64,000 nt of DNA, taken from the NCBI RefSeq assembly GCF_036971445.1, contig NC_091478.1, forward strand, positions 63,302,001 through 63,366,000. Reading direction: 5' to 3'. Shown in pieces: positions 18,699 to 61,573 of this stretch. The first letter of the stretch is position 1. Each line of letters starts with the position of its first letter. Source of the stretch: Narcine bancroftii. Lineage: Eukaryota. The position numbers and the translations under genes are program-made. A model generated the notes under the pieces. The model had not been told where the DNA came from, made no database searches, and worked only from the letters and a program-made list of their open reading frames with translations.

Positions 18699-18753
18699 AT
18701 GTTGTTCAAAGCAGTAATTCGGTACATGTCTCTTTTGGTTGTGATTTGGCAAG
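18699..18753 (+). CDS. IgSF gene A exon 1: leader peptide (MLFKAVIRYMSLLVVIWQ)
   Basis: ATG plus 18 codons, then phase-1 donor G|GTACGA. Aligns with the gene B leader at 55196-55250 (same length). Confidence 0.75.
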
Positions 18754-18918
18754 GTACGATCAATTTAGCAGCCACTTTGACGGCGTCAATCCGATTGCAC
18801 CATATTCTACGTTCGAATGCGATTCCCATTCTCTTGCCCTTGATCCTTCGAGGTTTTGTACTCGGCGTCTCTTGGTCCGGTGTGTGCATTTGTTTTTATC
18901 GTCCTTACTTTTTCCCAG

Positions 18919-19224
18919 CAGCCAAAGCAACTTCGAACAAGGTGGAACAATTCGATCGGGTTGTGAAAGTTTCCAAAGGTGGAAATGTAACGATGTACTG
19001 CAAGTATAAACTATTACAAGATATTGCTGACGTTTCCTGGTGGAAAGAGGGTGAGAAAACATTCATAGAGCCAGACAGCAAAACTCAATTTCGGGAAAAC
19101 AGGGCTATGAGTACATTTACGCTCCTGAACGCTAGTGTCGCAGATATCGGGATGTATTATTGTCAAGTGAAGCATCGGCAACAAATAATCGGAAATGGAA
19201 GCGGCTCCCAGCTTATTGTGTTGA
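18919..19224 (+). CDS. IgSF gene A exon 2: V-type domain with in-exon J-like motif
   Basis: Polypyrimidine-CAG acceptor, donor A|GTGAGT, phase 1-1. Motifs GGNVTMYC, VSWWK, DIGMYYC, GNGSGSQLIV. Confidence 0.92.
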
Positions 19225-19657
19225 GTGAGTGTATTTTTGTTACTCTGAGTAGGAGAATTTTGTGTTTTGGTGACATCGGTAAATTTCCCGGGTCGTTTTG
19301 ATTTAAAATGTGATAATTGGGTTAATAGGGTGTGAACGTATTCGTCTCATCCTTCAATAAATACTTCAGAGGTGGAATCCCGAAATAAAATAGAACACCC
19401 AGAGTTTATTCCTCACCTTATTTTGTGCTTCATATGGACGTGACCCCGTTCATTTCCACGCCATCCCGATTGTTTTGGCGTCCGCTTCTCAAATTCCCAA
19501 TGCAATGTTTCCTATCGCAAATTTCAGACACTTGCAAAACAAACTCCCAATTTTGAGATGGAGATTTTTTTTTCGGGAGAGCTGAATAATATTAGGGGAT
19601 AGGGGATGGAAAATATCATCAAAAACATTCATATTTGCATTCTTCTCTCTGTCTCAG

Positions 19658-19954
19658 CTCCCCCAACTCCCCTGAACATTGTTCCTGTTGAAACGACTTC
19701 ACCGCATTCTCGGAAACTCGTGTGTAAAACGGCTCCATTTTATCCGGAGGAATTAGAAATCATCTGGCGAAGAAATAACATGGACATTCGGACCGGAGTA
19801 GAAACTGAGACACGGACGACTGCGGAAGGATTTTATGAGGCTTCGAGTGTTTTGGAAGATTCGCAGCTTGCTCTGGGCAAAGCTGTTTACACCTGCCTCG
19901 TGTCACATGAGGCTCTTACAATGTCTGCCAGCTTCACCTACATTATCGAGCAAG
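19658..19954 (+). CDS. IgSF gene A exon 3: C1-set Ig domain
   Basis: CAG acceptor and G|GTAAGG donor. LVCKTAPFYPEELEIIW and YTCLVSH (FYP and YxCxVxH C1 signatures). Confidence 0.92.
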
Positions 19955-20769
19955 GTAAGGAGGGAAGCTCCAGCCCAGATGAGAAATTCTTCGACCACCG
20001 CAGTCTAGTCGCGCACGAGGGCAAGAAAGGTGAATTGTTTTCATTCACCATAAAAAGTTTTGTTTTCAAAAGCTAAAACGTCATTTCCAGTCTGAACTAA
20101 CATATTCTGCCTGCGACCTCGCAAACATTATTGCATATTTCAAAGCCATTAAAATGCAAACAAGCACCAATAGGAAATATAGCCAATGCTTAGGCCGATG
20201 GACGGACGTTAAGACGTTCAGGTGGACGTTAAGACCTTTTCCCAGGAGAAAAGCTAAAGCAGAAATTGGATTTATATGCGAAATTTAGCTTTGATGCGGG
20301 TAGAACGGGGGGAAACAGCGGAGAAAGCATCGGAATAAGCAAGTTAAGAAATGGCAAGAACTTAGAAACGGTTCCCGAAACATGATCGCGTGAGAGAAAG
20401 GCATAGCTGGGTAACATCCAATCACCAAGCCCCTTGTGGCGTTTGTGTCCAAGGTACAAATCCATTGCTGTTTAATTTTCGCAGCATGGGATTTACTCCT
20501 TCATCATCAATCACTCTGTCAAATGGTGCTTCAGCAAACACTATAACCTTTCATTCAAATCCAACCCATATAAGGGTCTTGAATCCCGTGCAGTCCAATC
20601 TCATAACATTCTCCACTCCTTATATCGTCGCAAAGTAATCGCTTTGAAGCGTTCAATTTGCTGTTAGTCCTTATGTTTCTCTTAGGCGACCGAGCAAATG
20701 ATTTGCCAGTGGACCGTAATGTAAAGAATTTTTTTTACGGCAGAAGAATTAGAAAGAAACCATTTGTGA

Positions 20770-21540
20770 CCATTAAATTAAGTGCAGAGGATTTCTACCT
20801 GCTGTACCAACTCCAAGATCTCTCTGCAGATCCATATCATTCACTGGGTGTATTCTACCCACATTATATCGGTCAAAATGCAACACCTTTCCTTTCTCTG
20901 TATTTAATCCCATCAAATATTCGTCTCCCCATCTGCCCAACCGATCAATATCATGCTGCAATCCTGTCCCAATCTTTGGGAATCGTCCTCACTGTCTACA
21001 ATACCGGACACTTCCGTGTCATCGACGAACATTTTGGAGCCGTAATTGACAGTTCTTTGAAGGCAGGGAAAAAAGGTAAAATCTCTTTCAAAGTTCAGAG
21101 TAATGTCTCTAAAATACATGGTATTAATGTAATGAATGGAAAGTAAAAATGCTAAACACAACCAATATTAAGCATATTTCTTAGAGTTGCAGATTCATGC
21201 AGCACAGAATTAGCCCTTCGGCCCATCTCATCCATACCGAATAAATTTGTATTCTGGGCCGGTTCCACGTGCCTGCATTTAGTCCACACAACTTTCCAAT
21301 CTAATCATCTGTGCAAATATCCTTGGAATTTGGAAATTGTGCTCGCTTCTATAGCTTCCTCTGCCAGCTCGATTAAAAAACGGACTGTCCTCTGAGAGAA
21401 GAGGTTTCTACTCAAGTCCCTCTCAAATCCCTCCTGATTCACCTTGGACCTATACTCTCTAGTTCTACAATCCTCAACACTGGAGACAATAAACAATGAG
21501 CGTTCACTCTATGCATGCCTCACATGATTTCAATAAATTG
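20770..21540 (-). mobile_element. Degenerate CR1 LINE fragments in gene A intron
   Basis: SKMFVDDTEVSGIVDSEDD RT motif and a CR1 3'-end-like sequence on the minus strand. Confidence 0.6.
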
Positions 21541-21766
21541 GCAAAATAATCTAATAGCCAATCCTCTTTATAGCGTAATACTGACTGTGTCTTGAGCACA
21601 AACAGAAATACGTTCCTCAATGTGTAACGTAAATATGTCCTACATTCCTTCCCGAGTCTCTATTATTCTCTATCCATCTCTTTTTTCCCTCATCTTCCTA
21701 CCTGCTTCGCTTCCCTCACCATTTAGAGCAGTGGTTCTCAACCTTTTTCTTTCCACTCACATACCA

Positions 21767-21823
21767 TTGGTATCACATGAATCCTCTAAGACACCCTCCC
21801 GTTTCAGTAGGTAGCCGAGCAAT
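21767..21823 (+). pseudogene. Relic of the 3' end of a C1 exon (LVSHESSKTPSRFS...EQ)
   Basis: Aligns with the end of gene A exon 3 (LVSHEALTMSASFT..EQG) and is followed by sequence homologous to the start of intron 3. Cut on the 5' side by a hAT-type end (CAGTGGTTCTCAACC at 21729). Confidence 0.65.
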
Positions 21824-22309
21824 GCAAGAAGGAAAGCATTTAAAGCAAGTTCCAACCCGGATGAGCAATTTAGGAGCGATGAATATGAATTATATATCTC
21901 GCTGTTGAATTCATCTGTTCCCCGTTACATTGCAAACATCCCAAGTCAATTCACAAAAACTTTTAAAATGCAAACAAGCACCAATAAGGAAATATGACAC
22001 AAGGAAATATGAGGGCAGATGGCCGGCTGCTTCGGCCATGAGGTAAACTTAAAAGATTTTTTGCATAACTGTATGTGGAGGTATGATGGCCAGATTCTAG
22101 GGTGACATTGACCAAGAATTTATTTTCGGGCGGAAAGCTGAGGCACGGGTGGATATAAGTTTATGGCCAGTAGAACAGGGATGGCCAGCCAAGAATGCAA
22201 CGAAACAAGCATGTTTATCGAAGGCAATGATCTGAAATAAGGGTGTCTAAACAAGCGAAGTGCGAGAAAGGCACAGTCCGGCATTGCCACCGCGCTAGGT
22301 AGCACAAAC

Positions 22310-22680
22310 ATCGGCCCTTCTGCCCAACGCGTCCTTACCGAACAAGATGCCCTTCCTGAACTAGTGGCATTTGTCTGTATTTAGCTCTTACGCCTCTAAA
22401 CCTTTTCTATCCATGTATCTTTCAAAATATTTTTTAGCTTTTTAATTTTTCCTGCTTCTGTTACCACCTCTGATGGAAATGCCACATACAACATATCCTC
22501 CACCATCTGAGTGCCCTTCAGGGTTATTTTACTTCTTTCCATTCTCATCTTTAATTCGTGCGTTCTTGTTTTGGCCTCCGCGAGCTCAAGGAAAATTCTG
22601 TGACAACCCATTTTATCTATGCCGTCATGATTTATAGAGGTCATCTCTCAGTCTCCTCCGTTCCAGGGAGAAAATGTCGC
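22310..22680 (-). mobile_element. CR1 3' end remnant
   Basis: Minus ORF 22396..22644 resembles the CR1 ORF2 C-terminus (KTRTHELK..). Confidence 0.5.
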
Positions 22681-23507
22681 GCCCTATGAAGTATATCGTC
22701 CTAACTCAAGCTTTACAGCCCCCCCCCCCCTACATTCACATCTGTTCTGCTCCCTTTCCAGCTTCGTGTACTTCAGAATTCGTTGCAACTCTCTTTGATA
22801 CCTCTGTGCCCACCAAAACAACTCTTGCTGCTTTCCTGCCACATGAAAATTGTTTCCTCGGTACCTATTACTCTACCACAGGATAATCTCTAAATAATGC
22901 CCACTAGATTAAGGTCCAATGTGTATATGTACGTCGGAGAGCAAAGATCTTGGACCTAATGCCGAATCGCCAGCAATTCCTTTCTATAAACCTTTCCATT
23001 CCAGATGACCATTGCTCCCGCTTTCCTTCATTCAGTTCGCCCTCATCCTTTGGGCAGGTTCACGTGAGAAAGCAAAAGGAAATGGGGGTTGTCAAAATTA
23101 TGCCTTTTAATGTGAAGTGATTTGGGGTGCCTTATTGTCTTATATGCACAAAGCAAATAACATGTTTCTCTTGTTAACAAATTAGAATCTGTTGGGGCAA
23201 GTACTGAATATCCGCTCCAGAACAGAGAACATCTTGACCTTTTCAAGCTAATGTCAAGCTGCTTGGTGCAGCATCGTAAACAGATAACGAGACTCCTCTT
23301 AATCTGAATAGACCATCTTATGTGCAAAGCACTAATGCGATTTGTTTGTTCTGTAGATTCTGTCATTAAATTATAATTCGTGATTTGTAGTGTTCCTTGT
23401 AATTTATGTACCATAAGGAATGAAAAATATATGTTCAGTCTTCTTGACTCCCAATACATGAATATGTATCTATGTGTCATGGTTTCTTGTTTTTTCATTT
23501 GGTTCAG

Positions 23508-23609
23508 AGAGCTCAGGTGGAAAATATGTTCTTGGATGTGCATTGAGCGGATCCGCAATTGTGATTCTGGTTATATTTTTGAACACATATGGATTAAAAA
23601 CAGATTGTG
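23508..23609 (+). CDS. IgSF gene A transmembrane exon TM1 (ESSGGKYVLGCALSGSAIVILVIFLNTYGLKTDC)
   Basis: Polypyrimidine-CAG acceptor, G|GTAAGA donor, phase 1-1, hydrophobic stretch, homologous to the gene B TM exon. Confidence 0.8.
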
Positions 23610-23764
23610 GTAAGAATACTGTAGAATTTACCATTCCTTCATTCTGTTTTAGATAAGAGAAAAATGACATCCTCTCAACCTGCAAAACACCATGACAATA
23701 GCGTAATTGACAATACCAAATTTTTAAATGGATCTTAAAATACAATTCTTTAAATTTTCCGGAC

Positions 23765-23829
23765 AGCTGCCTGGTTTCAAAATGAATCTTTCAAAGTTTA
23801 TGTCCGTTTAAGATACGGTGTCAAAAAGT
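23765..23829 (+). pseudogene. Second relic of a C1 exon 3' end (CLVS-NESFKVYVRLRYGVK)
   Basis: TGCCTGGTTTCA(A)AATGAATCT reads CLVS.NES with a 1-nt frameshift. Followed by AAGCTCCAGTGCAGATGTGAAATT, homologous to the intron-3 start at 19965. Confidence 0.55.
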
Positions 23830-24467
23830 TTAGACTAGAAGCGTTAAAGCAAGCTCCAGTGCAGATGTGAAATTTAAGTGGATTGCTGACATACTCGAGG
23901 ATGAAAATTATGAATTGTATTTATTCATAGTGAAAAGTCAACGTGCGAGCAGATCAAAAGTGAATACATCATTTCCAATCGAACTTCTGCATAGAAGGTC
24001 CGCTGAAGATTAATTGTCACTTGCCGACTATGCAAGTCTATAAAATGGAGTCTTTCCAATATCTCTCATTTCTCAACTCTCGCCATGTACGTTAGCTTTC
24101 TTCAAGTTTTCATCCAGATCCTTCTATAATATCCCCAGCCTACTAGACCCTTCTCCTTATCTATAATTCTACTGTTTGCATATCTCCTTTCTCCAGGAGT
24201 GGGGCCATCCCAGTTACGGCCCAGCCAACCATTCCGCCTAGTTATGCTTATATTTGATGTGGAGAGAGAAATAGTGAGACAACTTTGTTAATTCCGGTAT
24301 CGGTCGATAAGCATCACAAGGTTCCTACTTCCTCCAAGTAATTCTGTATTCTTCAACTCATTATCCATTATGTGTCCTCTTCAAATATTGTCTTCACCCT
24401 TGTTAATTTTACATACCGGAAGAACATTCTACTTTCCATGTGGTTTTACTCCAACAACAAGGACATG

Positions 24468-25555
24468 GTGCCCAATGCCACCATGTAATATTTGCTTAAT
24501 ATATTCCATAATTAACCAACAATCTGAGTTTTTTTTTTCAAACTGTAAAATGCTATATTTCGCCGACTCCCAATCCTTGTATTGTAATTGCATGGGGCTT
24601 TGTTGAGGTCACTCTGACGAGAATACAGTTTTGTCCTTAATACACAGGGAAGGATATCCTTTGTCTGAAGCTGAAGTGTCCATTCAAGAGATTGATTCCT
24701 AGACGAATAGTATCAGGCGTTGAATGGGGTGAGAATAATGGCATCGGTGTGAAGTTCAAAATGATTTCACTGAAATGGTTACATTGTAAGAGGGATTCCC
24801 CAGGCAATAAAGGGCGTGACACTTTCCTCCAGCCGGGATAACGGTCTGGCTTCCAAGATGCAAATGAACAAATCTTCTTCTCTGAGAGATTTATGACTCT
24901 TTGTTTACCTCAGAATACTGTGGACGAAAAGTCACTGAGAATATTCCAGGCTGCAATTGTTAAATTGAGAATCAAGCGATCTTAACGCCAAACGGGATAG
25001 TGGGTGACACCGTATTCTCGAGAAATGCCTTTAGGTTACAAAATGACAAAATCTTAGTTATATCGAAGTTATTTCATTCTTCCATATACTGTTTCGGGTC
25101 AATATGTTTTAGATTTCGTTCTGTTCATCCATTTTCTGCACACGATGTCTTCAGCTGTCAATACTCTTCATTCTCGATGTCCCTCTGCAACCCCATCTAT
25201 TGCATTACCTGTCTCTAAAATGTTCAATTTCCTATTATACGCATCAATACCTTTATATGCAATGTCGAGGGATTTATTGCTATGTTAGACACAACATAAA
25301 ATACCGGTTCTTCCACGCAGCTGCTTGAACCTAGGACAGGTGCTCACTGAACACGGAAGTCGTTTTGATCAGCTGATATGAATGCCCGGCTCAGCAAAAT
25401 AAAAAGCAAACAACTCCTCTTAATCGGAATAAACAATTCCTATGTGCCCAATGCCACCATGTAATGTTTGCTTAATATATTCCATAATTAACCAATAATC
25501 GGAGAATTTTTCAAACTGTAAAATACTATATTTCGCCGACTCCCAATCCTTGTAT
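24468..25555 (+). repeat. Local direct repeat of about 112 bp (24468-24582 and 25444-25555) from the pre-TM intron
   Basis: Near-identical copies GTGCCCAATGCCACCATGTAAT...GACTCCCAATCCTTGTAT. Confidence 0.9.
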
Positions 25556-25588
25556 GTTTCACAATTTCTTATTTTTCTCCTGATCCAG

Positions 25589-25690
25589 AAAGCAATTATA
25601 AAAGACTAACTATCATGCGTACAGCCGGTGGATTGGCCATTTTACTTCTGGTTATAATTTTGACAAGATTCGCATTAAAGGCATAACATG
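25589..25690 (+). CDS. IgSF gene A second transmembrane exon TM2 with a stop before the donor (ESNYKRLTIMRTAGGLAILLLVIILTRFALKA*); tail-less isoform or pseudo-exon
   Basis: CCAG acceptor, G|GTAAGA donor, 102 nt like TM1. TAA sits where gene B has TCA (LKASRG). Confidence 0.65.
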
Positions 25691-27068
25691 GTAAGAACTT
25701 TATATGGTTCCCATAATTATGTTGATAGAAAAGAGGTCTGTGCACTCACTAAGAATGGATTAGAACTCGCCAAGTTTGATTTGACTGACTGTCGACAATA
25801 CCAATGTAAATCATGCCTCAAAATACAATTATTCCTTTTTCCCATTTGAATTATTCGCTGCACTAATAATTTTTGAGCATCTTCTTATTCAAGAATGATG
25901 CACTCGTGATAAAGAGGGCGGACATTGAGCCTCGAGAAACCAAGCCTTCGTTTTCTCCTTAGAGGGATCCCTGAGCCGGCTGTCAATTGAGATGTGTCGG
26001 GAGGTTCAGGCGAGTTTGGTACGGCATGGGTAGATTAGGTCTAATACGTCGAAATGGCACGTTGCGATATTAGTATTCTAAATATTCAGTACCAAAGTGT
26101 GCATTTTTTAGTTTACCTAGTCTATGAACTAGATTTTTTTTTAATGGCAGTGCTGCCGGAGTTGCAGCAACCCTGCGGACGCTGTCGACCCAGCGCTGCT
26201 CTGCAGGGTCCAACCGCCCGGTATAGAAGCTTTAAATGACCTTCTAAAGGAGCCCACGGTGTTGTTATTTCCAATCAAGCAAATGCAGCGTCTGAGCCCT
26301 GGATGGCGGCGCCTATGCTCGGCAGCGGCCACAAGGGGTTACAGACACCGGGAGAGCAGCGGGCGGGTGCAGTTCACCAGAAATGGGGAGAACACCCCTT
26401 CCCCTTCTCCCCTTCAAGAATGAGAGGAGGAGACAACTCTGTAGGACCGATCAGCGGTTGAAGGATCTGCAGGACGGTGACTGTGGCAGCAGGCAAGTGA
26501 GGGGCTCAGAGGCCCACGCAGGCTGCAGGTGGTCAGCGACGCGGTCGAAAGACTCACGGAACTAGAATTCGAGGGTGGGGGGGGGAGGGCTCAGGTGCTC
26601 AGATCTGTAGCTGGGATTGCCAATGGATCTGTGCGGATGGAGTCTCTGAATGGACTTGTTTTCTACTTTCTTACTCTTACTGTACTTGTACTGGGCGCCA
26701 CACAATACGAATGGCACCTGTCTATCTTGCGGGAGCAGGAGGAAATTTGATGTAATATAAGATTTTTTTGTATTATTAGATGACAGTAAAATCGACTTGA
26801 AATCTTGAAATTATAGAGCTGCTGGCTCTCAGTTGGTCACCGGCTCCAAATTCTCCAAATGCATATTCTCCAAATGCTCTTCATTTTACCCCATCTCAAA
26901 GACATGCAGATTTGAGGGTTGTAAAATATACTTAATGTTCACGGAAGTGTTAAAATTTGGGGGAACATAGAGGTAACTGGCAATCAATGTTCCCTCTAAT
27001 CAATCTTATGTTGTACAATTTTTTTCCCCTGTGACATGTGTTATGTAGGGCTCACGCTCATCCCGCTC

Positions 27069-27278
27069 TGTGATGATATGTATATACTGTGGTTGGCCCG
27101 CCCACTGATGACTCGACCACCCCTTGTAACCCCTTCCCCTATGACCTGGCCATAAAGGTCGACCTCCCAGCCCCCTTCCATTCATTCCAGCAAATTGAGT
27201 TGGGCCAGCTGAAATCTAATGTGTATTAAAGCCGATCGTTCCTCACTCAATCTTTAGAGTTATTGATAAAGCGGATCG
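27069..27278 (+). mobile_element. Short solo LTR (Gypsy-like)
   Basis: TG start, CATAAA and ATTAAA signals, cGCTC/cACTC flanks as a possible degenerate TSD. Confidence 0.45.
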
Positions 27279-27559
27279 CACTCCTTCCCAGCAGTTTCAC
27301 AAGCATCTTTTATCTGCATTCCAATTCTGACTAAGAGACTTTAACTTTAAACATTAACTCTCTTCCAATGGATGTGATCTGAGCTGCTGAATTTTTCCAG
27401 CATTTCTAATTTTATTCTGTATTTCTGGCATCTTTTTTTAAGTACTTTGGAATGAATTTCACATTCCTTTCGATTCTACCACAAGGTCAGGTACCCAGGT
27501 GTTCCTGTCCATTTTGCAGTATTTTTCCCTTGGTGGTTCTCAGACCGCTTCTCATGTGG

Positions 27560-28020
27560 AAAAGAGCGCATCTAAACAATATTGGTCGTCTCCGTATAGA
27601 AGGAATATGATAACTCTAGAGATGGTGCCGAGGAGATTCACCAAGATGTGTCCTAGGCTGAAACATTTCAGTTATGGGGACAGAGTGGGTGCGCTGCCTT
27701 GGTTTTCACTGGAGTAGAGTCGGCGTATAAGAAATGATTATGGACATAGATGGGGTAGATATGACTAATCCTCTCCCACGGATCCGTTCACAGAGGCACA
27801 GTTTAAGATAAAGTGTAAGAGGCTTAAGGCTATATCAGAATGCTTTCTTTTCACTCAGTGGGTGATTCACGTTTGGTCTGCTCTGCTTGGAGTGGGGTGG
27901 GGACATGAAGTAAGAAGGAAAGAGAAAGGGGGAACTCTTACAGAGCTTCAGATGTGTCAAGATAAATGCTTGAATTTCAATAGCATAGATAAGTATGGAT
28001 CAAGTGCTGGTAAATGAAAT
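27560..28020 (+). mobile_element. CR1 3' end remnant
   Basis: WSSPYRRNMITLEMVPRRFTKM is the CR1 ORF2 C-terminal motif. Confidence 0.65.
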
Positions 28021-28066
28021 GAGGATGGGATGGCAGAAAGGCCTCTTTCTATAACATTATAATTCT

Positions 28067-28831: not shown

Positions 28832-29110
28832 ATAATTCTGTTGAGATCATGGGTCAAGTCAACATAGGAACTAATATTCGGCATGTTTCCTTTGAGTTGC
28901 TTGAGGTTGTAACTAAGAAAGTAGATCAGGACAAACGTTGAAGGTTTCTGATAGGGCAACAAGCAAAAAATTATCAAACACAAATAGAGAACATTGCAAG
29001 ATTGATAATAAACTGGTGTGAATTCAGAACTGGTTAATAAACAGTCAGCAAAGATTGTAAAAAGCAGATCATTTTCAGGTTTCGCCACTGTAGTTTCTGT
29101 GATATTACAG

Positions 29111-36056: not shown

Positions 36057-36059
36057 GTC

Positions 36060-36900: not shown

Positions 36901-36937
36901 CTTATCTTTTTTTTGGTTTTATAAGAAATAAAATAAA

Positions 36938-53130: not shown

Positions 53131-54732
53131 TAAATTAGAAAAGGAATAAAATACGTTGCCTGACTGATGCACCCAAACCCCTACCATGTTTAATTTGTTT
53201 GTGTTGGAATTGTTCTCAACACACAGAATGCAAAAGGATAAATTTAAATGCATTCACTTGCCCAGAGAAAATCATCCGCGATACAAAACATAAAAAGTGT
53301 TCAGATTATCCTCGTTCATCCCTTCCCCTTTTCATTCTGCATAGAAAAATATAGCATATGGGTGAATCCGAGTTGTTAAACAAGAACGTGGAGAGCAAGA
53401 GATCAGGATTGGTTTCTCCACCCTGGTCACACTTCTATAACTTGGATTTGAGGTTAATCATTCTCCAGCTATTTTTAAAACTAATATAAGCAGTAATCGC
53501 TGATTGATTTCCCAGTCTATGAAAGTGGAAAAGGTCCGCAAGTGCCGTTGATCCGAGTTGTAGAATGTGGACCCACCCCGCCACCTTCCCTTCGCCCTTC
53601 AGGTTCCAGGTTCGAGGGCACCAGGTTCAAGGGCAGTTACTTTCCCATCGTTAGTAGACTCCTGAGCGAACCGCGCTCGAGTAAAAAGATGGTGCCTTTT
53701 TCTGTGTTCTAATTGATTGTCGCTCTTTAACTATGCACTTCTACACTCTGTTTTACTTGCTCTGAATGGAGTGACTCGCTGGACTGTTGGCAAAACAAAT
53801 TTTATCATTAAACCTGGATACATGTGACAACAAATTGGAACCCGTCAACGAGTTCCTATTGTACAGGATTTAATGGAGATCTGTCAAGTGGGGTATAATA
53901 TTTCAATCTGCCCATCACATTTTAGGCAGGTTAAAGAGGGCGAAGAAAATATGACCAGAAAAGAAGTGAAGACTTTCCATTAATTAAAGGGATTAGAGAA
54001 TCTGGTTTTATTCGTTTAGAGGGTGTCTGATGCCGAGATTCGGGAGGATAACCCAATATGTATTAGTAAAGAAGACATTGACTGAGTGGTCGGCAACATT
54101 TGATGTAAGCTGGTTGGTAAAGCCACCGGAGGTGACTATTATTCGGGACTGACGAGCAATCTCTCGCAGTCGTGCTTTGACGAAGTTATACAGGTCATCA
54201 GATGGCCGGCGAGAGCGGATTTTCAAGTTCTAATTCAGATAAACGAATCTGGCGTGGAGGGAGCGTACAGATGAATTGGTGTCACTTTTATTGACATCTA
54301 ATTTACCTTGTAGTATAAAGTCCATCATTCTAGTTCGTTTTTGTCAATTGTGTTTCTTAAGAAATAAATCGATGAAGCTGAGTAAATGACTAACACGAAA
54401 ACGTGCAGATATCGTTGTTTACCCTGAACTTAAACTAAATTTTCAACAGATCAGAGTAAAAGAGAAAGAAATGTGTGGGTGTATAAATCTTTATTGTTAT
54501 TTCGGTGTCTTTAAAAATCCGCAGACGTGGAAGGTGAGAGAGAATAGACGGATGAGTGCAAAGGCCATGAGATGCTGGTCCAACTGTTCAGGGTGAATTA
54601 TTTGAACGCAATGTCTAGGAGAATCTGGAAAGCTATTTGACTCAGATCGGAATTGTTAATTTGCGAGATGGGAAGGGAAATCGCTCCTACTTGGCATTTC
54701 CACAAAACATCTCAATGTAAACGCACCGAAAG

Positions 54733-55055
54733 GCTGGAGGAACTCGGCTGGTCTTTTCACTATCTGCAGGAGACGTTTCGGGCCTGAGCCCTTCTTCAAG
54801 AAGAAAAAAAAATCAGAAAAGGAATATATCAGAAAGTCTTAGAATTCAAACAATGGGGGAGGAATCTGATACACCCTGTTTCTGCCTTTTCTGAGTTTTC
54901 CTCAGGTCCGAAACGTCGCCAGGAAAGGCAACAAAGACACAAAAAGTACAAAACAATGTCGGCAATATAATCCTTGTTTCCGAGAGATGCTGAAAAGACC
55001 AGCCGAACTCCTCCAGCATTTCGGTGTGTTGACTCCAATCACAGTGTCTGCAACC
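54733..55055. mobile_element. Inverted pair of Penelope pLTR-like repeats just upstream of gene B
   Basis: GCTGGAGGAACTCGGCTGGTCTTTTCA (54733) versus TGAAAAGACCAGCCGAACTCCTCCAGC (54991-55017); GACGTTTCGG/CCGAAACGTC cores. Confidence 0.6.
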
Positions 55056-55195
55056 TCTCGGAAACCTGTCCCACTGACATGGGGTGTCCGACGTCATGGT
55101 CACAAGCATCGAACACCTATTGGTAAAGAATTGTTTCTTACATCTGGGGACACCTCTCATTGGCAGCAGGTGGGAAGGAAACTCGGTTCCACAAT

Positions 55196-55250
55196 ATGTC
55201 ACTTAAAGTGTCAATTCGGGACATAAATCTTCTGGCTACAGTTTGGCTGG
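55196..55250 (+). CDS. IgSF gene B exon 1: leader (MSLKVSIRDINLLATVWL)
   Basis: ATG plus 18 codons, G|GTACGT donor; homologous to gene A exon 1. Confidence 0.75.
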
Positions 55251-55433
55251 GTACGTTCGTTAAATGTGCTGTGTCCAAACATCAAATCCTGTTTCAGATT
55301 ATTTCACGTTAGTTACGCAGTGCTTCTCCAAGTGGCTTGATGCTGTTTCAACATTGTTTTGTACTTTTTGTGTCTTTGTTGCCTTTCCTTGGCTGTGCCA
55401 CCATTTTAACGGTTCTTGCTTATTTTCTGACAG

Positions 55434-55739
55434 TCGCCGAAGTCACTTCGAGCAAAGTGGGCCAATTCCCTAAAGCGCAAAACGTCCTCAGAGGAGACAA
55501 TGTTTCAATGTTCTGCACATTCCCCGTGTCACGCGTTACTGCCGAAGTATATTGGTGGAGATGGAGCGAGAAGGCATTTATAGAACCAGACAGCAGAAAG
55601 AGGTTTACTGGTAAAAAGAGCAGTGAATTATTTCAGCTCTTGAACGCGACGGTCGCAGATTCCGGTACCTACTTCTGTAAAGTGAAGCGTCAAGAAAAAA
55701 CTGTCGGAGTTGGAAGTGGCTCCAGGCTCACTGTGTTCG
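55434..55739 (+). CDS. IgSF gene B exon 2: V-type domain with J-like motif
   Basis: CAG acceptor, G|GTAAGT donor, 306 nt like gene A. GDNVSMFC, VYWWR, DSGTYFC, GVGSGSRLTV. Confidence 0.92.
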
Positions 55740-56328
55740 GTAAGTTTTGAGTCAGTGAGAGAATTTAAGCTCCGTGCGGTATGGCCAAGGCTGGGTGATG
55801 GGGATAATTAACTGGACACACAGGAGACGGTAGGTGCTGGAGCCCGAAGGTAAACACAATCTGCTGGAGAAGCAGGGGGTCAAACTAAGTCACGGGTGAA
55901 AAAAAAACGATGCCTGTATCCACCATGTTTCAGTATTCCCACATGGGGACATTGTTTCGCCCTTCCCACCCTCTCCTTTTTTCGCTAGATTCTTTTCTAC
56001 ATTTCCCCGGTCTCAGTAAAGGCATTCAGCTCGAAACGTCGGCAATTCTTTTACATCCAATGGTGCTGTTTGACGCACAGAACTCCTTCAGCAGATTCTG
56101 TTTAGCGCAATGCTAACTAACTACTCTTTATGCTATCAAATCAAAGGACTCACAGATTGAATGTAACAATTCTGGAAAGCGTCAGCACATTATCCAGCGT
56201 CTGTGGAGCAAGAAAGTTTGTTCTGTTCTCAATTTTCTCCAAAGAACCTTTAAGTGAAGAATCACTTTGTTCTTTTTTTTGTGCTATTATCCAGCTTTCA
56301 GATTCGACCTTAATTTTTCACATGATGG

Positions 56329-57053
56329 TGTGACAGAGTATATAGAGGTGTTTGGGAGATAAATTGGGAAAGGTTTGTTAGAGCAGGTCACACACCAACA
56401 CTTTTAAACACAGCATTTTTGCAGGAGCTTTTGCAAGAGTGCAGGCGGAGAGGAGAAAAAAAATAGGCTTTGCTCTCAGAGTTGGAGGGAGTGAGAGTGA
56501 GAGAGAGAGAGAGAGAGAGAAACACAGACATCATTTCTAGAGGGAAAAGCTTTGGAGGCACACCTGGTCAAAGGAGAGGGGTTGCTGTCTCGTGTTTCCC
56601 TTGGAATAGGTGAAACAGAAAGGAACTCTGTAATGTCCTGGGACAGGTTTCGTCAGCAAGACTGGAGTGGCTGATGAAAAAGGAATCAGTTGTGGATGTC
56701 CAGGAACAAGAACAACTCTCTCTCTGAAAGCCAACAAGAACCTTTCTGAGTGGTATCCATTTACCTGTTAAGCACCAACGCCTGGTGAACTTTATTAACG
56801 TTAACCTCTGTGTACAGCGGAAGAATTGCCTGCAACCAGTGAGATTGGACTGTGAACCAAAGAACTCACACATGCGCTTAGCATTAGAGGGGGGGGGGGG
56901 GGGGTTAAGTCTAAGTGAGTCAATAGATATAAGTTAAAGTTTGATTCTATTTTCATGTTCAAAGATAATTAAAAGCAACTTTTGTTTAAGTAACCCTTTG
57001 TCGTGATGCATATCTATTGCTGCTGGGTTTTTGGGTCCTCTGGACTAGTAACA
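56329..57053. mobile_element. Solo LTR in the gene B V-C1 intron (same family as 31301-32304)
   Basis: TGT...TAACA termini; shared AAAGTTTGATTCTATTTTCATGTT and TCTATTGCTGCTGGGTTTT blocks. Confidence 0.75.
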
Positions 57054-57140
57054 ATATGTTAGGGTGTTTTAAATCTAATGACTTGAATAGAAGTTTTGTT
57101 CGAATTCTTTTGCAGGGAAGTTGCTGAGAGGATTGGGTGT

Positions 57141-57466
57141 TTAAATCTTGGTTGTGACAGGAAGGGAAGCTGCCTCCTCTCCGAAATCACGAGAACAATT
57201 TTAGCTCCACGGTTCTTTTAGGCGCACATCCAGGCCAACCACAATCTCCGAAGAAAGGCCCTCCCGCAGCTGATATTAATTCACGCACCAGGAGTCTTTT
57301 ATTTTTGGCGTCATCCCTTCAGGGCTATTATGCGAATTTTCCGAAAGGTATAAATCTATTCCGTCATTTGGCAACAGAAGGTGTTACGGTCCTCTCAGGA
57401 TAGGGGGCTGTACACGTTTAGAGTTGGGGATTAGAAGCTATACGACAGCGGACAAAGGGAACTGAG
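57141..57466. repeat. Unclassified repeat of about 300 bp, copy 1 (copy 2 at 61806-62088)
   Basis: TTAAATCTTGGTTGTGACAGGAAGGGAAGCTGCC...GGACAAAGGGAACTGA occurs twice within gene B introns. Confidence 0.85.
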
Positions 57467-59114
57467 TCACGACATCCATAAAAGAACAAAGGAACAGCCC
57501 CGGGGTTAAATATTCCTGTTTCGCGGTCTGAAACCGGATTCAGACCACCGTGATAATTTAACAAAGGAATATCATTTACTATTCAAAGGCGTGGTGTATT
57601 CTTACCCTTGATGTATCCGAGTTTTGGAACCGAATATCTCTGTCCCACCGCCAGCCTCAGTCCAAAATGACATGATTGCAGCCGCTCCATATCTGTAAAA
57701 CCGTTACATGATTCTGTAGCAAAACCAAAGTTTGAAAAGGACAAATGGAACCGGGCTTTGCAGTCACAATGCAAATTTGATACGGTGATGTAAAGATATA
57801 TTGGGGAACGCCTGGAATCTTATCCTTGATGATCTTATCATCATTTCCCTTGACAGGACGCAAACCCTGGCCTCTTTCCAAATATTAATTCTCCACTAAA
57901 TACATGTGTTCGTGGCGTGGGGGAATTCTACGTTTTAGTTGGCAATTCATTAGGAGTATAACGACTGAAATCTCTTCCGAAGCTAACAACACGCCTGTAG
58001 TACAAAAACGAAAAACAGATTCAGAACATTGATGTTAAACAGATTGCTTGTAATTAACCCTTCAACGAGCGAAACTATACATAGTATTCCAGGTAAGTAA
58101 TGACTGTAGACCTAACGGAGGCAAATCAGCGTTCGCAAGCGAAAACTATAGCGCTGGTGTAAGTAGAATCTTATTCAGAAAATTAACTTAACAAAGCGGG
58201 TGCGTCTATTTCGAAACGGCAAACGAATAGAAGACGTGTATTGATGTTCCATTTCCACATCGGTAACTAATATTAAATATCATTCGACCGTGCCATACAA
58301 AATGCTCAGCGCTCCAACACATCATGTTCTGGAGAATGCTCTCGTTGTGAGAGTTCCATCATGTGAACTCTCCCATCTAGACACCGAAACAATTGCGAGG
58401 ACCAAGCTCTAATCGATATTTGTAGCTTCGCCCTGGCCCTAGATATTGGTGATATCAGGATGTCTACTGCGCTGTGTTCGTTAACAATGCTTAAAGCTTC
58501 TCCGGTCCAGGCTCGGTTCTGATTTAGTCTGTGCGCAGATGCACAGTCTCCTTGGAATTTCTTCAAGGGCTCCAGTTACTTCCGCCTGCCAAAGATGGGC
58601 TGGTGTCTAGGGAAACAAGTAACAGTAAATTGTCCCCGGTAGATGAGCAATGATGAAGAAGGAATGAGGTTAGTTATTAGGGATGTTGAAAGAGAACGGG
58701 ATTTGTGGGCTTATGCACTTAATGGTCGGCGCGAGCGCGGGAGGCGGTGGGGGTTGTTTTCGTGCCGTGAATCACGATGACATGCAATGATACACATCTG
58801 AATCGCTACAATACCTAACATTAGAAGCAGGAAGATTTGAAGTGGTTGCTACCAACTTCTACCGCGCGCTAAATCTGTCATTTCCATTCCAAACAGTGGT
58901 GCAAACGTGCATTTTACCTCCATCAAGTTCCACATTCCTTGTGCACTGCTTAAAACCATTTATTTTACAAAATAATTGATAACCCCAACAGTTTAAAAGC
59001 GATCGAGTTGATACCTAATATGTTGGCAGCATTGTAATATAGCCAGGGGAATGAAGCAAACGTTCATTAACATGCAAAGCACACATTCAAAACAACTCTT
59101 TTCTTCTGTTAAAG

Positions 59115-59414
59115 TTCCGCCAACACCCCTGAAAATTGTTCCTGTTGAAGGGATTTCGCCACCTTCTCGAAAACTCGTGTGTAAAACGGTTCCTTTTTAT
59201 CCTGAGACGACATTGGAATTCTCCTGGTTAAAAAATAGTGCAACAATTCCGACTGCAAAAGGAGACGTGGAAAATAGCAGCGTGGAGGGACTGTTTGAGG
59301 CTTCCAGTTGTCTGAATATTACGCCGCCTTTCTGGGGCAAAGATGTTTACATCTGCCTGGTGTCTCACGTCTCCCTCTCTGGGCCCGCCAGCGCCAATTA
59401 CACCGTCCAGCAAG
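59115..59414 (+). CDS. IgSF gene B exon 3: C1-set Ig domain
   Basis: AAG acceptor, G|GTAAGA donor; LVCKTVPFYPETTLEFSW and YICLVSH. Confidence 0.92.
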
Positions 59415-59899
59415 GTAAGACGCTGGACATTTAAGGTAAGACGCTGGCATTTAAACCGTGAACAGAGGGTGAATTCTGGAGAAACAGAAGCACTGCAAAT
59501 GCTGCAATCTGGAGCAAACAATGAAAAGATGAAGGGATAAATGGTCAGGCTAAGTTTCGGGTTGGGACCTTTATCGAGAATAAAATAGGATGATAACTCT
59601 CACCCGGTATAGAAATGCAACTGGACATTAGTCCGAACACGAGGACGAGGGGTAACTATTAACGATCTTTATTCGGAATGGAAGATCGGTGTACATATAT
59701 GGAATTAGATCCGCATAGGAGAAATTGGCAACTGATATTTGAAAAGCAATTAAAAAGCTTAAGTCTGAGACGGTCTGCCACAAAACATAATAAAACGTTG
59801 GCTTTTTACATGTGGAATGAGGAGCAATTAGTGGGATGGAGATGTTAATCTTAATAATTGGAAATCTAGAAACATTTCAATGCTTCATCATTGAGCATT

Positions 59900-60400
59900 T
59901 TCTGCATAGATTGTTTTTGGAAAATAAAATCGCCATGAAAGGGGTCCAGTGAATGTTTACCAGACAGATTCCTAGAACGGTAAGACGTATGACTGGATAA
60001 ATTAGAATTATACTTGCGTGATTTAGAATATTGAGAGATCTAAATTTCTGACAGGAACAGACAGTTTGGATTCAGAAAGAATATTCCCGATGTTGTGCAA
60101 GTCTGGAACAAAGATAAGGGGCATGACTGTCTATAAGAGGTAAACCATTAGGACCGAGATGAGGAGAAACTTACATATTCAGAGAGTTGTGAACTTGTGG
60201 AACTTCCGACAACCAAACATTGTTGAGGCCAATTTATTTATTTTTTTAAAGTTGAATGTGGCCCTATTGGCTAAAGGGACCAAGGGGCATGGAGAGAAAG
60301 CACGAATAGGCTCCTGAAGTTGCATTAGTCATGATGGTGTTGAATGCTGATGGTGGTGCGGGCTGACAATCCTTCTCCAGCATCTATTTTCTTTGTTTCT
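59900..60400 (+). mobile_element. Degenerate CR1 3' remnant
   Basis: GACCGAGATGAGGAGAAAC..CAGAGAGTTGTGAACTTGTGGAA is a CR1-type 3' motif. Confidence 0.55.
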
Positions 60401-60726
60401 AAAATCTGTTGGTAAATATGCCAGTGAAGTTCCTTGGAATATTTAAATAGTTAAAGGCATTCTTGTCACATTTCAAAATCTGTAGAAGCTAAAATTAGGT
60501 GCCATTCTGGGGTATGTGAATCATTTTGAATCTGCAATTCTTCATGTTATATGCTAAGAGAAAAAAAAAACATTTATTTTTACCCTTCATAAGTAACTCT
60601 GGGCCCTTTCAAACTGCTGTGTAAAATGGGGTTAACTGGGCACTATTCCCTTTATGTTATATTGTACACCTGGGATTGAATGACAGGTTTGAAATGCTCT
60701 GCCTTTATGACTCCCAATCCTCAAGG

Positions 60727-60763
<37 letters not shown>

Positions 60764-60799
60764 ATTTTATAGTTTCTAATGAATCTGTTTCTCTGGTAG

Positions 60800-60898
60800 A
60801 ATCTGATTATGCACTGATTCTTGGATGTGCAGCAGGTGGAATGGCATTTTTAATTCTGGTTACAATTCTGGCATTAGTCCGATTAAAGGCATCACGTG
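60800..60898 (+). CDS. IgSF gene B exon 4: transmembrane (ESDYALILGCAAGGMAFLILVTILALVRLKASR)
   Basis: TAG acceptor, G|GTAAGT donor, phase 1-1; uncharged hydrophobic helix followed by basic stop-transfer residues. (TG)n lies just upstream. Confidence 0.88.
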
Positions 60899-61529
60899 GT
60901 AAGTTTGTGTGGTACTTCACCAAACGCTTAAATGTCCCAATAGTATTTTTAGAAAAGAGGAAGAGTGAGTTAATGGTAATCAATGGCAGAAGAATAAAGA
61001 TAATGTACTCCATTAATATGATGAATCTGCATAACAAATGTATTATGTGGTAAAAAAAAAATATCTATGGAAGCACGAAGTGGGTCTGGAAATATTTTTT
61101 TCCCATTCGAATTCCTTTCTCACCTTATACACTCCTATATTTTGGCCATTTTCAATTGTTCATGCATGGCATTTAAACATATATCTTTAATTGCAAGCAA
61201 CTCTTTTCTTTGTTTTGGGGCAACCTGATCTAAATCTCTGAGCTGTTAATGTCCATTATAAAGTTGAGTTCTGAAACAGCCATTGACACCAACCATTATT
61301 TTACAATATAATTCAAAGTAAACTTCCATAACATTTGGTATGCATTATTAACGAGTATGAGAAGCTAATGCGCAAACATAAAATTGTAACAACTTTCATT
61401 GTGAAATGGTTTGAAATACATCCACAGCATCAGGAATCCTTATTCTCGGCAATACATTTGATTAGCTTCAGAGTGGTGATGTTTGTTTTATGGTCACAAA
61501 TTTTGTTAATCAAATTGTTTTCTTTTTAG

Positions 61530-61573
61530 ATGTGAATAGAAATTTAATGGAAGAAAGAGAAAATGCAGAATTG
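61530..61573 (+). CDS. IgSF gene B probable first cytoplasmic exon (DVNRNLMEERENAEL)
   Basis: Strong T-rich TAG acceptor, phase 1 in frame with the TM exon, TTG|GTAGGA donor. Further exons would lie beyond the window. Confidence 0.6.

What the first reader, a model, noticed from the sequence alone, without database searches (positions are those of the whole stretch)
18699..61573. Tandem pair of non-rearranging, antigen-receptor-like VJ-C1-TM genes
Seen: two same-strand paralogues about 36 kb apart with the same exon plan. Each has a 55-nt leader, a 306-nt V exon that already includes a J-like GxG strand (GNGSGSQLIV / GVGSGSRLTV), a 297/300-nt C1 exon with FYP and YxCxVxH, and a TM exon. All junctions are phase 1 and I see no RSS in or next to the V exons. 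Known: C1-set domains are restricted to Ig, TCR, MHC, b2m, tapasin, SIRP and B7-H6-type proteins, and a germline-joined VJ plus C1 is the proposed pre-RAG antigen receptor form (compare NKp30, B7-H6/NCR3LG1, SIRP, PRARP, shark UrIg). Inference: an expanding cartilaginous-fish receptor family that may be poorly described or lumped as SIRP-like or NCR3LG1-like.
Basis: partly seen in the sequence, partly recalled or inferred. Interest (0 to 1): 0.85.

Follow-up and report, generated by a model that had tools for sequence, protein, structure and literature searches.

The report
Ray non-rearranging VJ-C1 receptor genes
Two old paralogous genes in the lesser electric ray encode membrane receptors built like a ready-joined antibody light chain (V+J, one C1 domain, membrane anchor); they belong to a large, unnamed receptor family found in all cartilaginous fish that databases mislabel as SIRP-like or NCR3LG1-like.

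Summary
The window (Narcine bancroftii) carries two same-strand genes. Each has a 306-nt V exon ending in a J-like GxGSxLxV strand, a 297/300-nt C1 exon (FYP, YxCLVSH) and a 99-102-nt TM exon. All junctions are phase 1 and no RSS is present. The copies are old (45% and 52% aa identity; dS 0.6-1.1; dN/dS 0.4-0.6).

They belong to a discrete family of at least 130 clusters, all named members from 16 chondrichthyan species. NCBI gives it about nine inconsistent "-like" names. About half the members carry ITIM tails; others are short-tailed or lack a TM.

Sequence profiles place the V-C1 unit nearest Ig light chains, then SIRPα and UrIg2. No orthology to SIRP, B7-H6 or UrIg was found.

RNA contigs show the leader-V-C1 splicing, but from a near-identical ITIM-bearing paralogue (XP_069757172-8), not demonstrably from the window's copy. 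Gene A has its own TM exons; one has an Arg and an in-frame stop, suggesting an activating or decoy partner, or decay. Gene B's leader intron would be only 39 nt.

The N runs lie in intergenic TG repeats. The scan noted sister genes 126 and 289 kb upstream. Verdict: an undescribed member of the SIRP/PRARP-like non-rearranging VJ-C1 receptor kind.

The parts
12401..12455 (+). Orphan leader-like exon: 55 nt, starts with ATG, donor AAA|gtaca. No V exon follows it before gene A.
   Evidence: It matches gene A's leader at 43 of 55 nt, and 67 nt around it are 80.6% identical by blastn. tblastn with the P0002 leader hits it. No V or C1 exon lies nearby.
18699..18753 (+). Gene A leader exon (55 nt, MLFKAVIRYMSLLVVIWQ plus 1 nt; phase 1).
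   Evidence: Read from the sequence. RNA contigs join 18753 to 18919 or 18922 with GT..AG ends. The leader is identical to that of NCBI models P0002/P0166.
18919..19224 (+). Gene A V exon (306 nt) with a built-in J-like G strand (IIGNGSGSQLIVL). It has a NAGNAG acceptor (18919 or 18922).
   Evidence: Pfam V-set scores 36.2 bits against a cut-off of 26. RNA contigs cover 18920-19222 with 0 mismatches. The family HMM scores 125 bits. No RSS is present.
19658..19954 (+). Gene A C1 exon (297 nt; PFYPE, YTCLVSH).
   Evidence: Pfam C1-set scores 40.7 bits against a cut-off of 21. RNA contigs join V to 19658 but differ from the window at 7 of 297 nt; they come from the paralogue or allele encoding P0002.
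23508..23609 (+). Gene A TM-like exon 'TM-A' (102 nt, phase 1-1; ESSGGKYVLGCALSGSAIVILVIFLNTYGLKTDC).
   Evidence: Sequence and splice sites. tblastn against family TM segments gives E 2e-4 to 6e-6. No RNA contig lies on it in 4 runs.
25589..25690 (+). Gene A TM-like exon 'TM-B' (102 nt; ESNYKRLTIMRTAGGLAILLLVIILTRFALKA, then stop). It has an Arg where most members have Cys. TAA lies at 25684-25686 where gene B has TCA.
   Evidence: Read from the sequence. It is 79% nt-identical to gene B's TM exon; alignment. Its use in RNA was not tested because it lies outside the stretch laid.
50588..51086 (.). Two N runs (50588-50813 and 50952-51086) inside a TG-rich microsatellite between the two genes.
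   Evidence: No exon is involved and the runs were not filled.
55340..55394 (+). Gene B leader candidate (55 nt, MLFQHCFVLFVSLLPFLG). The donor GCT|gtgcca is weak and the intron would be 39 nt. It is in frame with the V exon if unspliced.
   Evidence: A 39-nt perfect inverted repeat (54921-54959 / 55351-55389) overlaps it.
55434..55739 (+). Gene B V exon (306 nt) with a J-like strand (TVGVGSGSRLTVF).
   Evidence: Pfam V-set scores 35.9 bits. The family HMM scores 112 bits.
59115..59414 (+). Gene B C1 exon (300 nt; PFYPE, YICLVSH).
   Evidence: Pfam C1-set scores 33.3 bits. Sequence. It is 70.8% nt-identical to gene A's C1 exon.
60800..60898 (+). Gene B TM exon (99 nt, phase 1-1; ESDYALILGCAAGGMAFLILVTILALVRLKASR).
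   Evidence: tblastn against family TM segments gives E about 1e-5 to 9e-10.

Best explanation
The window holds two anciently diverged members of a multigene family of germline-joined (non-rearranging) VJ-C1-TM immunoglobulin-superfamily receptors. As far as the named members show, the family is specific to cartilaginous fish.

Each chain is a signal peptide, one compact V/I-type domain whose last strand is a built-in J (GxGSxLxV), one C1-set domain, a TM helix and, in many family members, a tail with several ITIM/ITSM-like tyrosines.

Inferred mechanism: these are innate, germline-encoded cell-surface receptors that work like SIRP, PRARP or KIR-type paired receptors. The V domain binds a ligand through its variable BC and FG loops. 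ITIM-tailed members would recruit SH2 phosphatases and inhibit. Short-tailed members, some with Arg, Lys or Asp in the TM, would signal through an adaptor or act as decoys.

Gene A fits this pairing. Its ectodomain is almost identical to that of an expressed ITIM-bearing Narcine paralogue, but it has different TM exons and no detectable ITIM tail. Gene B is a separate lineage of the same batoid subfamily.

Shown: exon anatomy, domain types, absence of RSS, family membership and spread, tail types in the family, and splicing of the near-identical paralogue.
Inferred: ligand binding, inhibitory or activating signalling, and expression of the two window copies.
For: No RSS was found.

Family:
- An exhaustive phmmer search with the C1 exon gave 414 hits at E<=1e-3.
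- A family C1 HMM scores at least 86 bits on about 130 proteins and at most 60 bits on everything else.
- All named members come from 16 chondrichthyan species, including Callorhinchus.
- In each species the gene models sit on one large contig.

Tails among 130 members: 61 have ITIM-like motifs, 23 have short tails, 19 have long tails without a motif, and 27 have no TM. Some carry R, K or D in the TM (alignment).

Profile against PDB, per V-C1 unit: lambda light chain 74.6 bits, kappa 70.5, SIRPα d1-d2 60.7, UrIg2 59.0. The family's 'NGtGskLtV' aligns onto the J strand 'FGTGTKVTV' of light chains and 'SGAGTELSV' of SIRPα.

The AF2 model of paralogue P0002 has an ectodomain at pLDDT above 90, two Ig domains, a TM helix and a disordered tail. 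Foldseek's best matches are Fab light chains.

Spliced leader-V-C1 RNA contigs occur in 4 runs of one study.

Gene A against P0002: V 100% and C1 94% amino-acid identity, but TM only 35-47%, and the ITIM tail is absent from the window.

A against B: dN/dS is 0.37 for V and 0.59 for C1, so both stayed under constraint after an old split. In the C1 tree, A groups with Narcine P0002 (98*) and a Hypanus/Mobula clade (95*), and B falls inside the batoid clade (99*).
Against: - No contig carries the window's own C1 variants and none lies on TM-A, so transcription of gene A itself is unproven.
- TM-B has a stop. Gene B's leader intron would be only 39 nt. No cytoplasmic exons were found. Both genes sit among LINE and LTR elements. 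Either gene could be decaying.
- P0002 could be an allele or other haplotype rather than a paralogue.
- Ligand, cell type and signalling are entirely inferred.
- The homodimer test gave no answer.
Confidence: 0.75

Rival explanations
1. One or both window copies are non-functional duplicates (pseudogenes in the making) of expressed family members that lie elsewhere in the cluster.
For: All RNA contigs over the C1 exon carry the paralogue's letters, not the window's. No contig lies on TM-A. TM-B has an in-frame TAA. Gene B's leader intron would be 39 nt, and a fresh 39-nt inverted duplication cuts into the leader. No tail exons were found. The neighbourhood is TE-rich. Neither gene was returned as its own protein model.
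Against: All V, C1 and TM exons are open with intact splice sites, and every hallmark residue is kept. dN/dS between A and B is below 1 after dS of 0.6-1.1. Contigs drop rare variants, so absence from them is weak evidence. The stop lies at the end of a TM exon, where it yields a tail-less receptor rather than destroying the protein.
Confidence: 0.3
2. The family is the cartilaginous-fish counterpart of PRARP. PRARP is the non-rearranging VJ-C1-TM-ITIM family described in bony fish, amphibians, reptiles and birds (Fu et al. 2019, J Immunol; recalled from memory and cited in PMC10751288). This is compatible with the best explanation: it would supply a name, not a different mechanism.
For: As I recall the paper, PRARP has the same architecture: a VJ exon, one C1 domain, a TM and an ITIM. 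PMC10751288 lists PRARP among the VJ genes of the MHC and its paralogons.
Against: No PRARP sequence or paper was available. Among the 150 hits listed in the exhaustive C1 search, the non-chondrichthyan ones that I identified score at most 60 bits on the family HMM and are multi-C1 'SIRP-like' proteins.
Confidence: 0.2
3. They are true SIRP orthologues (CD47-type 'don't-eat-me' receptors) that have lost one C1 domain.
For: SIRPα d1-d2 aligns across the whole V-C1 unit at 60.7 bits, including the J-like strand. ITIM tails and paired short-tailed forms match the SIRPα/β logic. NCBI names many members SIRP-like.
Against: There is one C1 domain, not two. Ig light chains score higher than SIRP. The naming is inconsistent. 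Lungfish 'SIRP-like' proteins score only 42-52 bits on the family C1 HMM, against at least 86 for members. A 2026 survey finds the human SIRP family conserved only to Tetrapoda (PMC13262535).
Confidence: 0.1
4. They are NCR3LG1 (B7-H6) orthologues, meaning ligands for NKp30 rather than receptors.
For: B7-H6 also has a V plus C1 ectodomain. NCBI labels several members NCR3LG1-like.
Against: No B7-H6 chain is among the best 60 of 12,271 PDB matches, whereas SIRP, UrIg2 and Ig chains are. The family has tens of genes per genome with ITIM tails, which is receptor-like. From memory, Flajnik 2012 reports that B7H6 copy number tracks NKp30 copy number.
Confidence: 0.07
5. They are germline-joined Ig light-chain or TCR-type genes, that is, bona fide antigen-receptor chains that were joined in the germline.
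For: Light chains are the best-scoring V-C1 match (74.6 bits) and the best structural match. Germline-joined light-chain clusters exist in cartilaginous fish, and the scan notes some in this genome on other pieces.
Against: TM exons and ITIM tails are present. The J strand has N or V where light-chain and TCR J segments have F or W. The V domain is compact, without a C'' strand. The C1 clade is discrete. No RSS relic is present.
Confidence: 0.03

Closest known systems
SIRP family (SIRPα/β/γ)
   Same: The N-terminal V domain has a J-like G strand and is followed directly by a C1-set domain. The proteins are type I membrane proteins. There are ITIM-tailed inhibitory members and short-tailed partners with near-identical ectodomains. 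SIRPα d1-d2 aligns end to end with the family profile.
   Different: SIRP has two C1 domains and this family has one. The similarity is only family-level (60.7 bits) and lower than to Ig light chains. The family is large and chondrichthyan, whereas human-type SIRPs are traced only to tetrapods.
[quoted passage not shown] 2019)
   Same: As recalled, PRARP has a non-rearranging VJ exon, one C1 domain, a TM and an ITIM tail. That is the same architecture.
   Different: PRARP was described in bony vertebrates. Homology to this family could not be tested here because neither sequences nor the paper were available.
UrIg / UrIg2 (Flajnik et al. 2023, 2025; PDB 9DMX)
   Same: These are non-rearranging single-exon VJ genes with a split leader, followed by C1-type domains, in cartilaginous fish. 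UrIg2 is among the top PDB profile hits (1e-37).
   Different: UrIg has three C domains and is secreted. UrIg2 has nine to eleven C domains in sharks. Both are single genes. Here there is one C1 domain, a TM, ITIM tails and dozens of copies.
Ig light chains (lambda, kappa and shark germline-joined clusters)
   Same: They give the best sequence match (74.6 and 70.5 bits) and the best fold match for the V-J-C1 unit. The J strand aligns residue for residue.
   Different: This family has no rearrangement signals. It has TM and cytoplasmic exons. N or V replaces the J-motif F/W. The V domain is shorter and lacks C''.
NCR3LG1 (B7-H6) and NKp30
   Same: B7-H6 has a V plus C1 ectodomain, and NKp30 has a non-rearranging VJ domain. 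The automatic annotation borrows the NCR3LG1 name.
   Different: B7-H6 is not among the top PDB matches. The multigene, ITIM-bearing, receptor-like character does not fit a ligand.

Membership tests
C1-set Ig domain | A match to Pfam PF07654 above its gathering score, with the FYP and YxCxVxH motifs | tested here: met
   Scores are 40.7 and 33.3 bits against a cut-off of 21. PFYPE and YTCLVSH / YICLVSH are present.
V domain with built-in J (VJ) | A V-set match plus a G strand carrying the GxG bulge and LxV, all in the same exon | tested here: met
   V-set scores are 36.2 and 35.9 bits against a cut-off of 26. The strand aligns onto light-chain J and the SIRPα J-like strand. It is flanked only by splice sites.
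V domain with built-in J (VJ) | Full V-set topology with C' and C'' strands, and F or W before the GxG | tested here: not met
   The AF2 model of the paralogue with an identical V domain shows no C'' strand. Pfam I-set and ig models score nearly as well as V-set. The residue before GxG is N in gene A (an N-G-S sequon) and V in gene B.
Rearranging antigen receptors (Ig/TCR) | Separate V and J segments flanked by RSS (heptamer, 12/23 spacer, nonamer) | tested here: not met
   V and J are contiguous in one exon, and no RSS lies at either V exon.
SIRP | A V-C1-C1 ectodomain | tested here: not met
   Only one C1 exon lies between V and TM in both genes and in nearly all family models.
SIRP | An ITIM tail (α) and a short-tailed, charged-TM partner (β) with a similar ectodomain | tested here: inconclusive
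   This is met at family level, and for gene A against P0002. However, use of the TM-B exon, and whether P0002 is a separate locus, are not shown.
SIRP | Orthology or synteny with the tetrapod SIRP locus, and CD47 binding | not testable with these tools
   No annotated vertebrate genome context was available. PMC13262535 dates the SIRP family to Tetrapoda.
NCR3LG1 (B7-H6) | Closest sequence relationship to B7-H6, and NKp30 binding | tested here: inconclusive
   B7-H6 is absent from the best 60 PDB profile hits. Its own score could not be read out. Binding is not testable here.
PRARP | VJ-C1-TM-ITIM architecture | tested here: met
   The architecture is met at family level. In the window genes it is met only up to the TM.
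PRARP | Phylogenetic grouping with chicken, frog or fish PRARP | not testable with these tools
   No PRARP sequence id was available and the paper is not held.
UrIg / UrIg2 | VJ followed by three or more C1-type domains, in a single-copy gene | tested here: not met
   There is one C1 domain, and the family has many genes.
Paired activating/inhibitory receptors | Near-identical ectodomains joined to different TM and tail modules | tested here: met
   Gene A against P0002: V 100% and C1 94% amino-acid identity, TM 35-47%. The ITIM tail is absent from the window.
Paired activating/inhibitory receptors | Association of the charged-TM form with an ITAM adaptor, and of the ITIM form with SHP-1/2 | not testable with these tools
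   This is a biochemical question.

The most novel reading that the evidence does not exclude
This expanded, membrane-bound, single-C1 VJ family could be the closest living relative of the pre-RAG receptor gene whose VJ exon was split by the RAG transposon. That would make it a membrane VJ-C1 chain with light-chain-like V-J-C1 sequence, closer to that ancestor than UrIg/UrIg2. It would give cartilaginous fish a KIR/SIRP-like system of paired innate receptors built from antigen-receptor parts.
Probability: 0.1. Interest if true: 0.85.

Novelty: new member of a known kind. Interest (0 to 1): 0.58.

Why it matters
Non-rearranging VJ-C1 genes are the sought-after relics of the gene that the RAG transposon invaded. 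So far the discussion rests on NKp30, SIRP, PRARP and the shark UrIg/UrIg2 genes.

A pan-chondrichthyan family with dozens of VJ-C1-TM genes per genome adds a large and apparently uncharacterised data set to that question. Its V-J-C1 unit scores best against Ig light chains, and it includes ITIM-tailed and short-tailed forms.

It also points to a paired inhibitory/activating receptor system in the oldest jawed vertebrates, where NK-type receptors are essentially unknown.

Practically, the current automatic names (SIRP-like, NCR3LG1-like, Ig lambda-like, TCRβ-like, tapasin-related-like and others) are misleading and should not be used for orthology inference.

Tried and rejected
I could not fetch the locus of P0002 to prove that it is a separate gene.
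- Homodimer test (complex prediction, two copies of the P0002 ectodomain): no answer, score 0.00. This is neither support nor evidence against.
- A second homologous-protein run at E<=10 added only embigin. The word index does not reach outgroups, so no named SIRP, B7-H6, TCR, IgL or PRARP sequences could be put in a tree.
- Foldseek against PDB returned only Fab light chains at low TM-scores (elbow-angle effects). It does not discriminate among VJ-C1 families.
- Literature: the PRARP paper, the UrIg 2023 paper and the two Flajnik/Ohta B7H6 papers are not held. Ten full-text searches found no description of this family.
- Sensitive tblastn for ITIM-tail exons found nothing credible in the window. 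The only hit is a chance-level 'ELTYSACDL' at 20052-20126.
- An Rfam search on the highly expressed repeat at 21.7 kb found nothing.
The window's exons were searched exon by exon by reference. V and C1 trees were built separately, and the natural NCBI protein P0002 served as the full-length proxy.
- The N runs were not filled.

Full report
**1. Observation**

The window is from the lesser electric ray, Narcine bancroftii. The only near-identical proteins are NCBI models from that species. Two same-strand genes are present.

Gene A:
- Leader 18699-18753 (55 nt, donor AAG|gtacg).
- V exon 18919-19224 (306 nt).
- C1 exon 19658-19954 (297 nt).
- Two TM-like exons, 23508-23609 and 25589-25690 (102 nt each).

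Gene B:
- V exon 55434-55739 (306 nt).
- C1 exon 59115-59414 (300 nt).
- TM exon 60800-60898 (99 nt).

All acceptors and donors are canonical and every junction is phase 1.

Pfam puts both V exons above the V-set cut-off and both C1 exons above the C1-set cut-off. The copies share 45.5% (V) and 52.5% (C1) amino-acid identity. dS is 1.08 and 0.61, and dN/dS is 0.37 and 0.59. This is an old duplication whose two products stayed under constraint.

A six-frame scan with family HMMs finds exactly two V and two C1 exons in the 64 kb. The rest of the window is LINE and LTR retroelement sequence.

No heptamer-spacer-nonamer lies in or beside either V exon. The J-like strand (IIGNGSGSQLIVL in A, TVGVGSGSRLTVF in B) is contiguous with V and is followed directly by a splice donor.

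The two N runs lie inside an intergenic TG microsatellite, about 25 kb after gene A's last exon and 4 kb before gene B. They touch no exon. They only make the 36-kb spacing, and the continuity between the genes, assembly-dependent.

**2. Caveats to the exon plan**

Gene B's 55-nt leader candidate (55340-55394) has a poor donor and would leave a 39-nt intron. That is too short for ordinary vertebrate splicing, but it is a multiple of three, so the ATG stays in frame with the V exon if it is retained. A perfect 39-nt inverted repeat (54921-54959 / 55351-55389) overlaps this leader.

Gene A's second TM exon is the true counterpart of gene B's TM exon (79% nt identity). It carries TAA where gene B has TCA, and an Arg where most members have Cys.

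No cytoplasmic exon could be found for either gene.

**3. What family it is**

An exhaustive phmmer search with the C1 exon against 1.84 billion representatives gave 414 hits. An HMM of the family's C1 domain scores 86-152 bits on about 130 proteins and at most 60 bits on everything else. The family is therefore a discrete clade.

Every member that carries a name comes from a chondrichthyan:
- Rays and skates: Narcine, Pristis, Mobula (two species), Hypanus, Hemitrygon, Amblyraja, Leucoraja.
- Sharks: Scyliorhinus (two species), Heterodontus, Heptranchias, Mustelus, Chiloscyllium, Hemiscyllium.
- Chimaera: Callorhinchus.

In each species the models sit on one large contig. The names are automatic and inconsistent: SIRPα-, SIRPβ-, NCR3LG1-, Ig lambda-, TCRβ-, tapasin-related-, CD276-, PD-L1- and MHC class II-like.

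The nearest non-family C1 domains belong to multi-C1 'SIRP-like' or unnamed proteins of coelacanth, lungfish, teleosts and a snake.

In the C1 tree the family splits into two large subfamilies. Gene A groups with the Narcine models (98*) and a Hypanus/Mobula clade (95*). Gene B is a long branch inside the same batoid clade (99*). The V tree is less resolved.

The scan's own unchecked notes list similar VJ-C1 genes with ITIM tails 126 kb and 289 kb upstream on the same piece. This suggests a cluster.

**4. Architecture and nearest known relatives**

The family alignment shows these conserved features:
- The V-domain Cys pair, WW(K/R)xGE and DxGxYxC.
- The strand (N)G(T/S)GSxLxV.
- PPTPLK, FYPE and YTCLVSH.
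- A TM that often begins with a Cys.
- In many members, tails with repeated LTYAxL, SxYAQL or TxYxxL motifs.

By a simple motif count over 130 members, 61 have ITIM-like tails, 23 have short tails, 19 have long tails without a motif, and 27 lack a TM. A few have R, K or D in the TM.

A profile of 42 members against all PDB sequences gives these scores per V-C1 unit: lambda light chain 74.6 bits, kappa 70.5, SIRPα d1-d2 60.7, UrIg2 59.0. The family's J-like strand lies exactly on light-chain J (FGTGTKVTV) and on the SIRPα strand SGAGTELSV. B7-H6 and TCR chains are not among the best 60.

The AF2 model of the paralogue P0002, whose V domain is identical to gene A's, is confident over the ectodomain (pLDDT above 90). 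It shows a compact V domain without a C'' strand, a G strand split at the GxG bulge, a C1 domain, a TM helix and a disordered tail. Foldseek returns Fab light chains.

The position of the J-motif F/W is taken by Asn in most members, creating an N-G-T/S sequon. A glycan there would sit on the face that Ig and TCR V domains use to pair, which argues against a canonical V-V dimer. This is inference only. A homodimer prediction gave no answer.

**5. RNA**

Four runs of one study hold spliced contigs. They join leader to V, with two acceptors three bases apart that match NCBI isoforms X1 and X2, and they join V to C1 at 19224|19658.

The V part matches the window with 0 mismatches. The last two V bases read AA instead of GA, and the C1 part differs at 7 of 297 positions. 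The four differences that one search lists give V>A, K>R, S>P and one silent change, as in NCBI models XP_069757172-8 (P0001, P0002, P0166-8); three further residue differences near the end of C1 could hold the other three. The TM exon and ITIM tail of those models (LTYASL) are not in the window.

Transcription of the window's own gene A is not shown, and gene B was not tested.

The models also show a TM-skipping isoform (X4). The phase 1-1 TM exon allows this.

**6. Mechanism**

The best-supported reading is a germline-encoded receptor family that works like SIRP, PRARP or KIR-type paired receptors. The V domain would bind ligand. Differences between A and B concentrate in the A'-B, B-C and F-G regions, while the C' segment FIEPDS is conserved. 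ITIM tails would give inhibitory signalling. Short-tailed or charged-TM forms would act as activating or decoy partners.

Gene A, with an ectodomain twin that bears an ITIM and its own Arg-containing, stop-truncated TM exon, is a candidate partner of this kind. It could equally be a decaying duplicate.

**7. Comparison and novelty**

- It is not UrIg or UrIg2: there is one C1 domain, a TM and many genes.
- It is not a SIRP orthologue: there is one C1 domain, the clade is separate, and SIRP is traced only to tetrapods.
- It is not demonstrably B7-H6.
- It has the same architecture as PRARP as I recall that paper. Homology could not be tested.

I found no description of the family in the held literature. 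The genes exist in public annotation under misleading names. I therefore rate it a new, uncharacterised member of a known kind: non-rearranging VJ-C1 receptors of the SIRP/PRARP type.

**8. Limits**

Noticed in passing
window 12401-12455: An orphan leader exon matches gene A's leader at 43 of 55 nt. It has an ATG and a GT donor, but no V exon follows it before gene A. It could be an alternative first exon for gene A or the relic of a lost paralogue.
   Followed up: partly
window 54921-54959 and 55351-55389: A perfect 39-nt inverted repeat. Its second arm lies inside gene B's leader coding sequence, so this is a recent inverted duplication of part of the leader, 391 nt upstream.
   Followed up: partly
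window 18917-18922: A NAGNAG tandem acceptor (cag|cag) at the V exon. RNA contigs use both sites, giving the plus or minus Ala difference between NCBI isoforms X1 and X2.
   Followed up: yes
window 19191-19199 (gene A J-like strand); family alignment A1/A2: The position of the J-motif Phe/Trp is Asn in most family members, forming a conserved N-G-T/S glycosylation sequon on the strand that Ig and TCR V domains use for pairing. Gene B has Val there.
   Followed up: partly
window 21722-21768: A repeat core of about 45 nt (…AGCAGTGGTTCTCAACCTTTTTC…) is matched by thousands of RNA contigs at summed depths of 16,000-166,000. It is probably a SINE or other dispersed-repeat core found in many transcripts. 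It has no Rfam match.
   Followed up: partly
window 24468-24582 and 25444-25555: A 115-nt direct repeat (92% identity) lies between the two TM-like exons of gene A. This fits a local duplication that produced the second TM exon.
   Followed up: no
window 42.0-46.0 kb (-) and 62.1-64.0 kb (+); 4.8-9.1 kb (-); 37.4-39.0 kb (+): Two copies of an LTR-type retroelement (RT plus integrase zinc-binding domain) and two LINE-type RT ORFs, one an open 633-aa ORF, fill most of the non-receptor sequence.
   Followed up: partly
window 50814-51180: The N runs are embedded in a long imperfect TG/GA microsatellite. This may be why the stretch is unread or masked.
   Followed up: no
NCBI models P0001 and P0168 (paralogue of gene A): Annotated isoforms either skip the phase 1-1 TM exon (X4, predicted soluble) or use an internal acceptor in it (X3). 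The family may therefore make soluble forms by alternative splicing.
   Followed up: no
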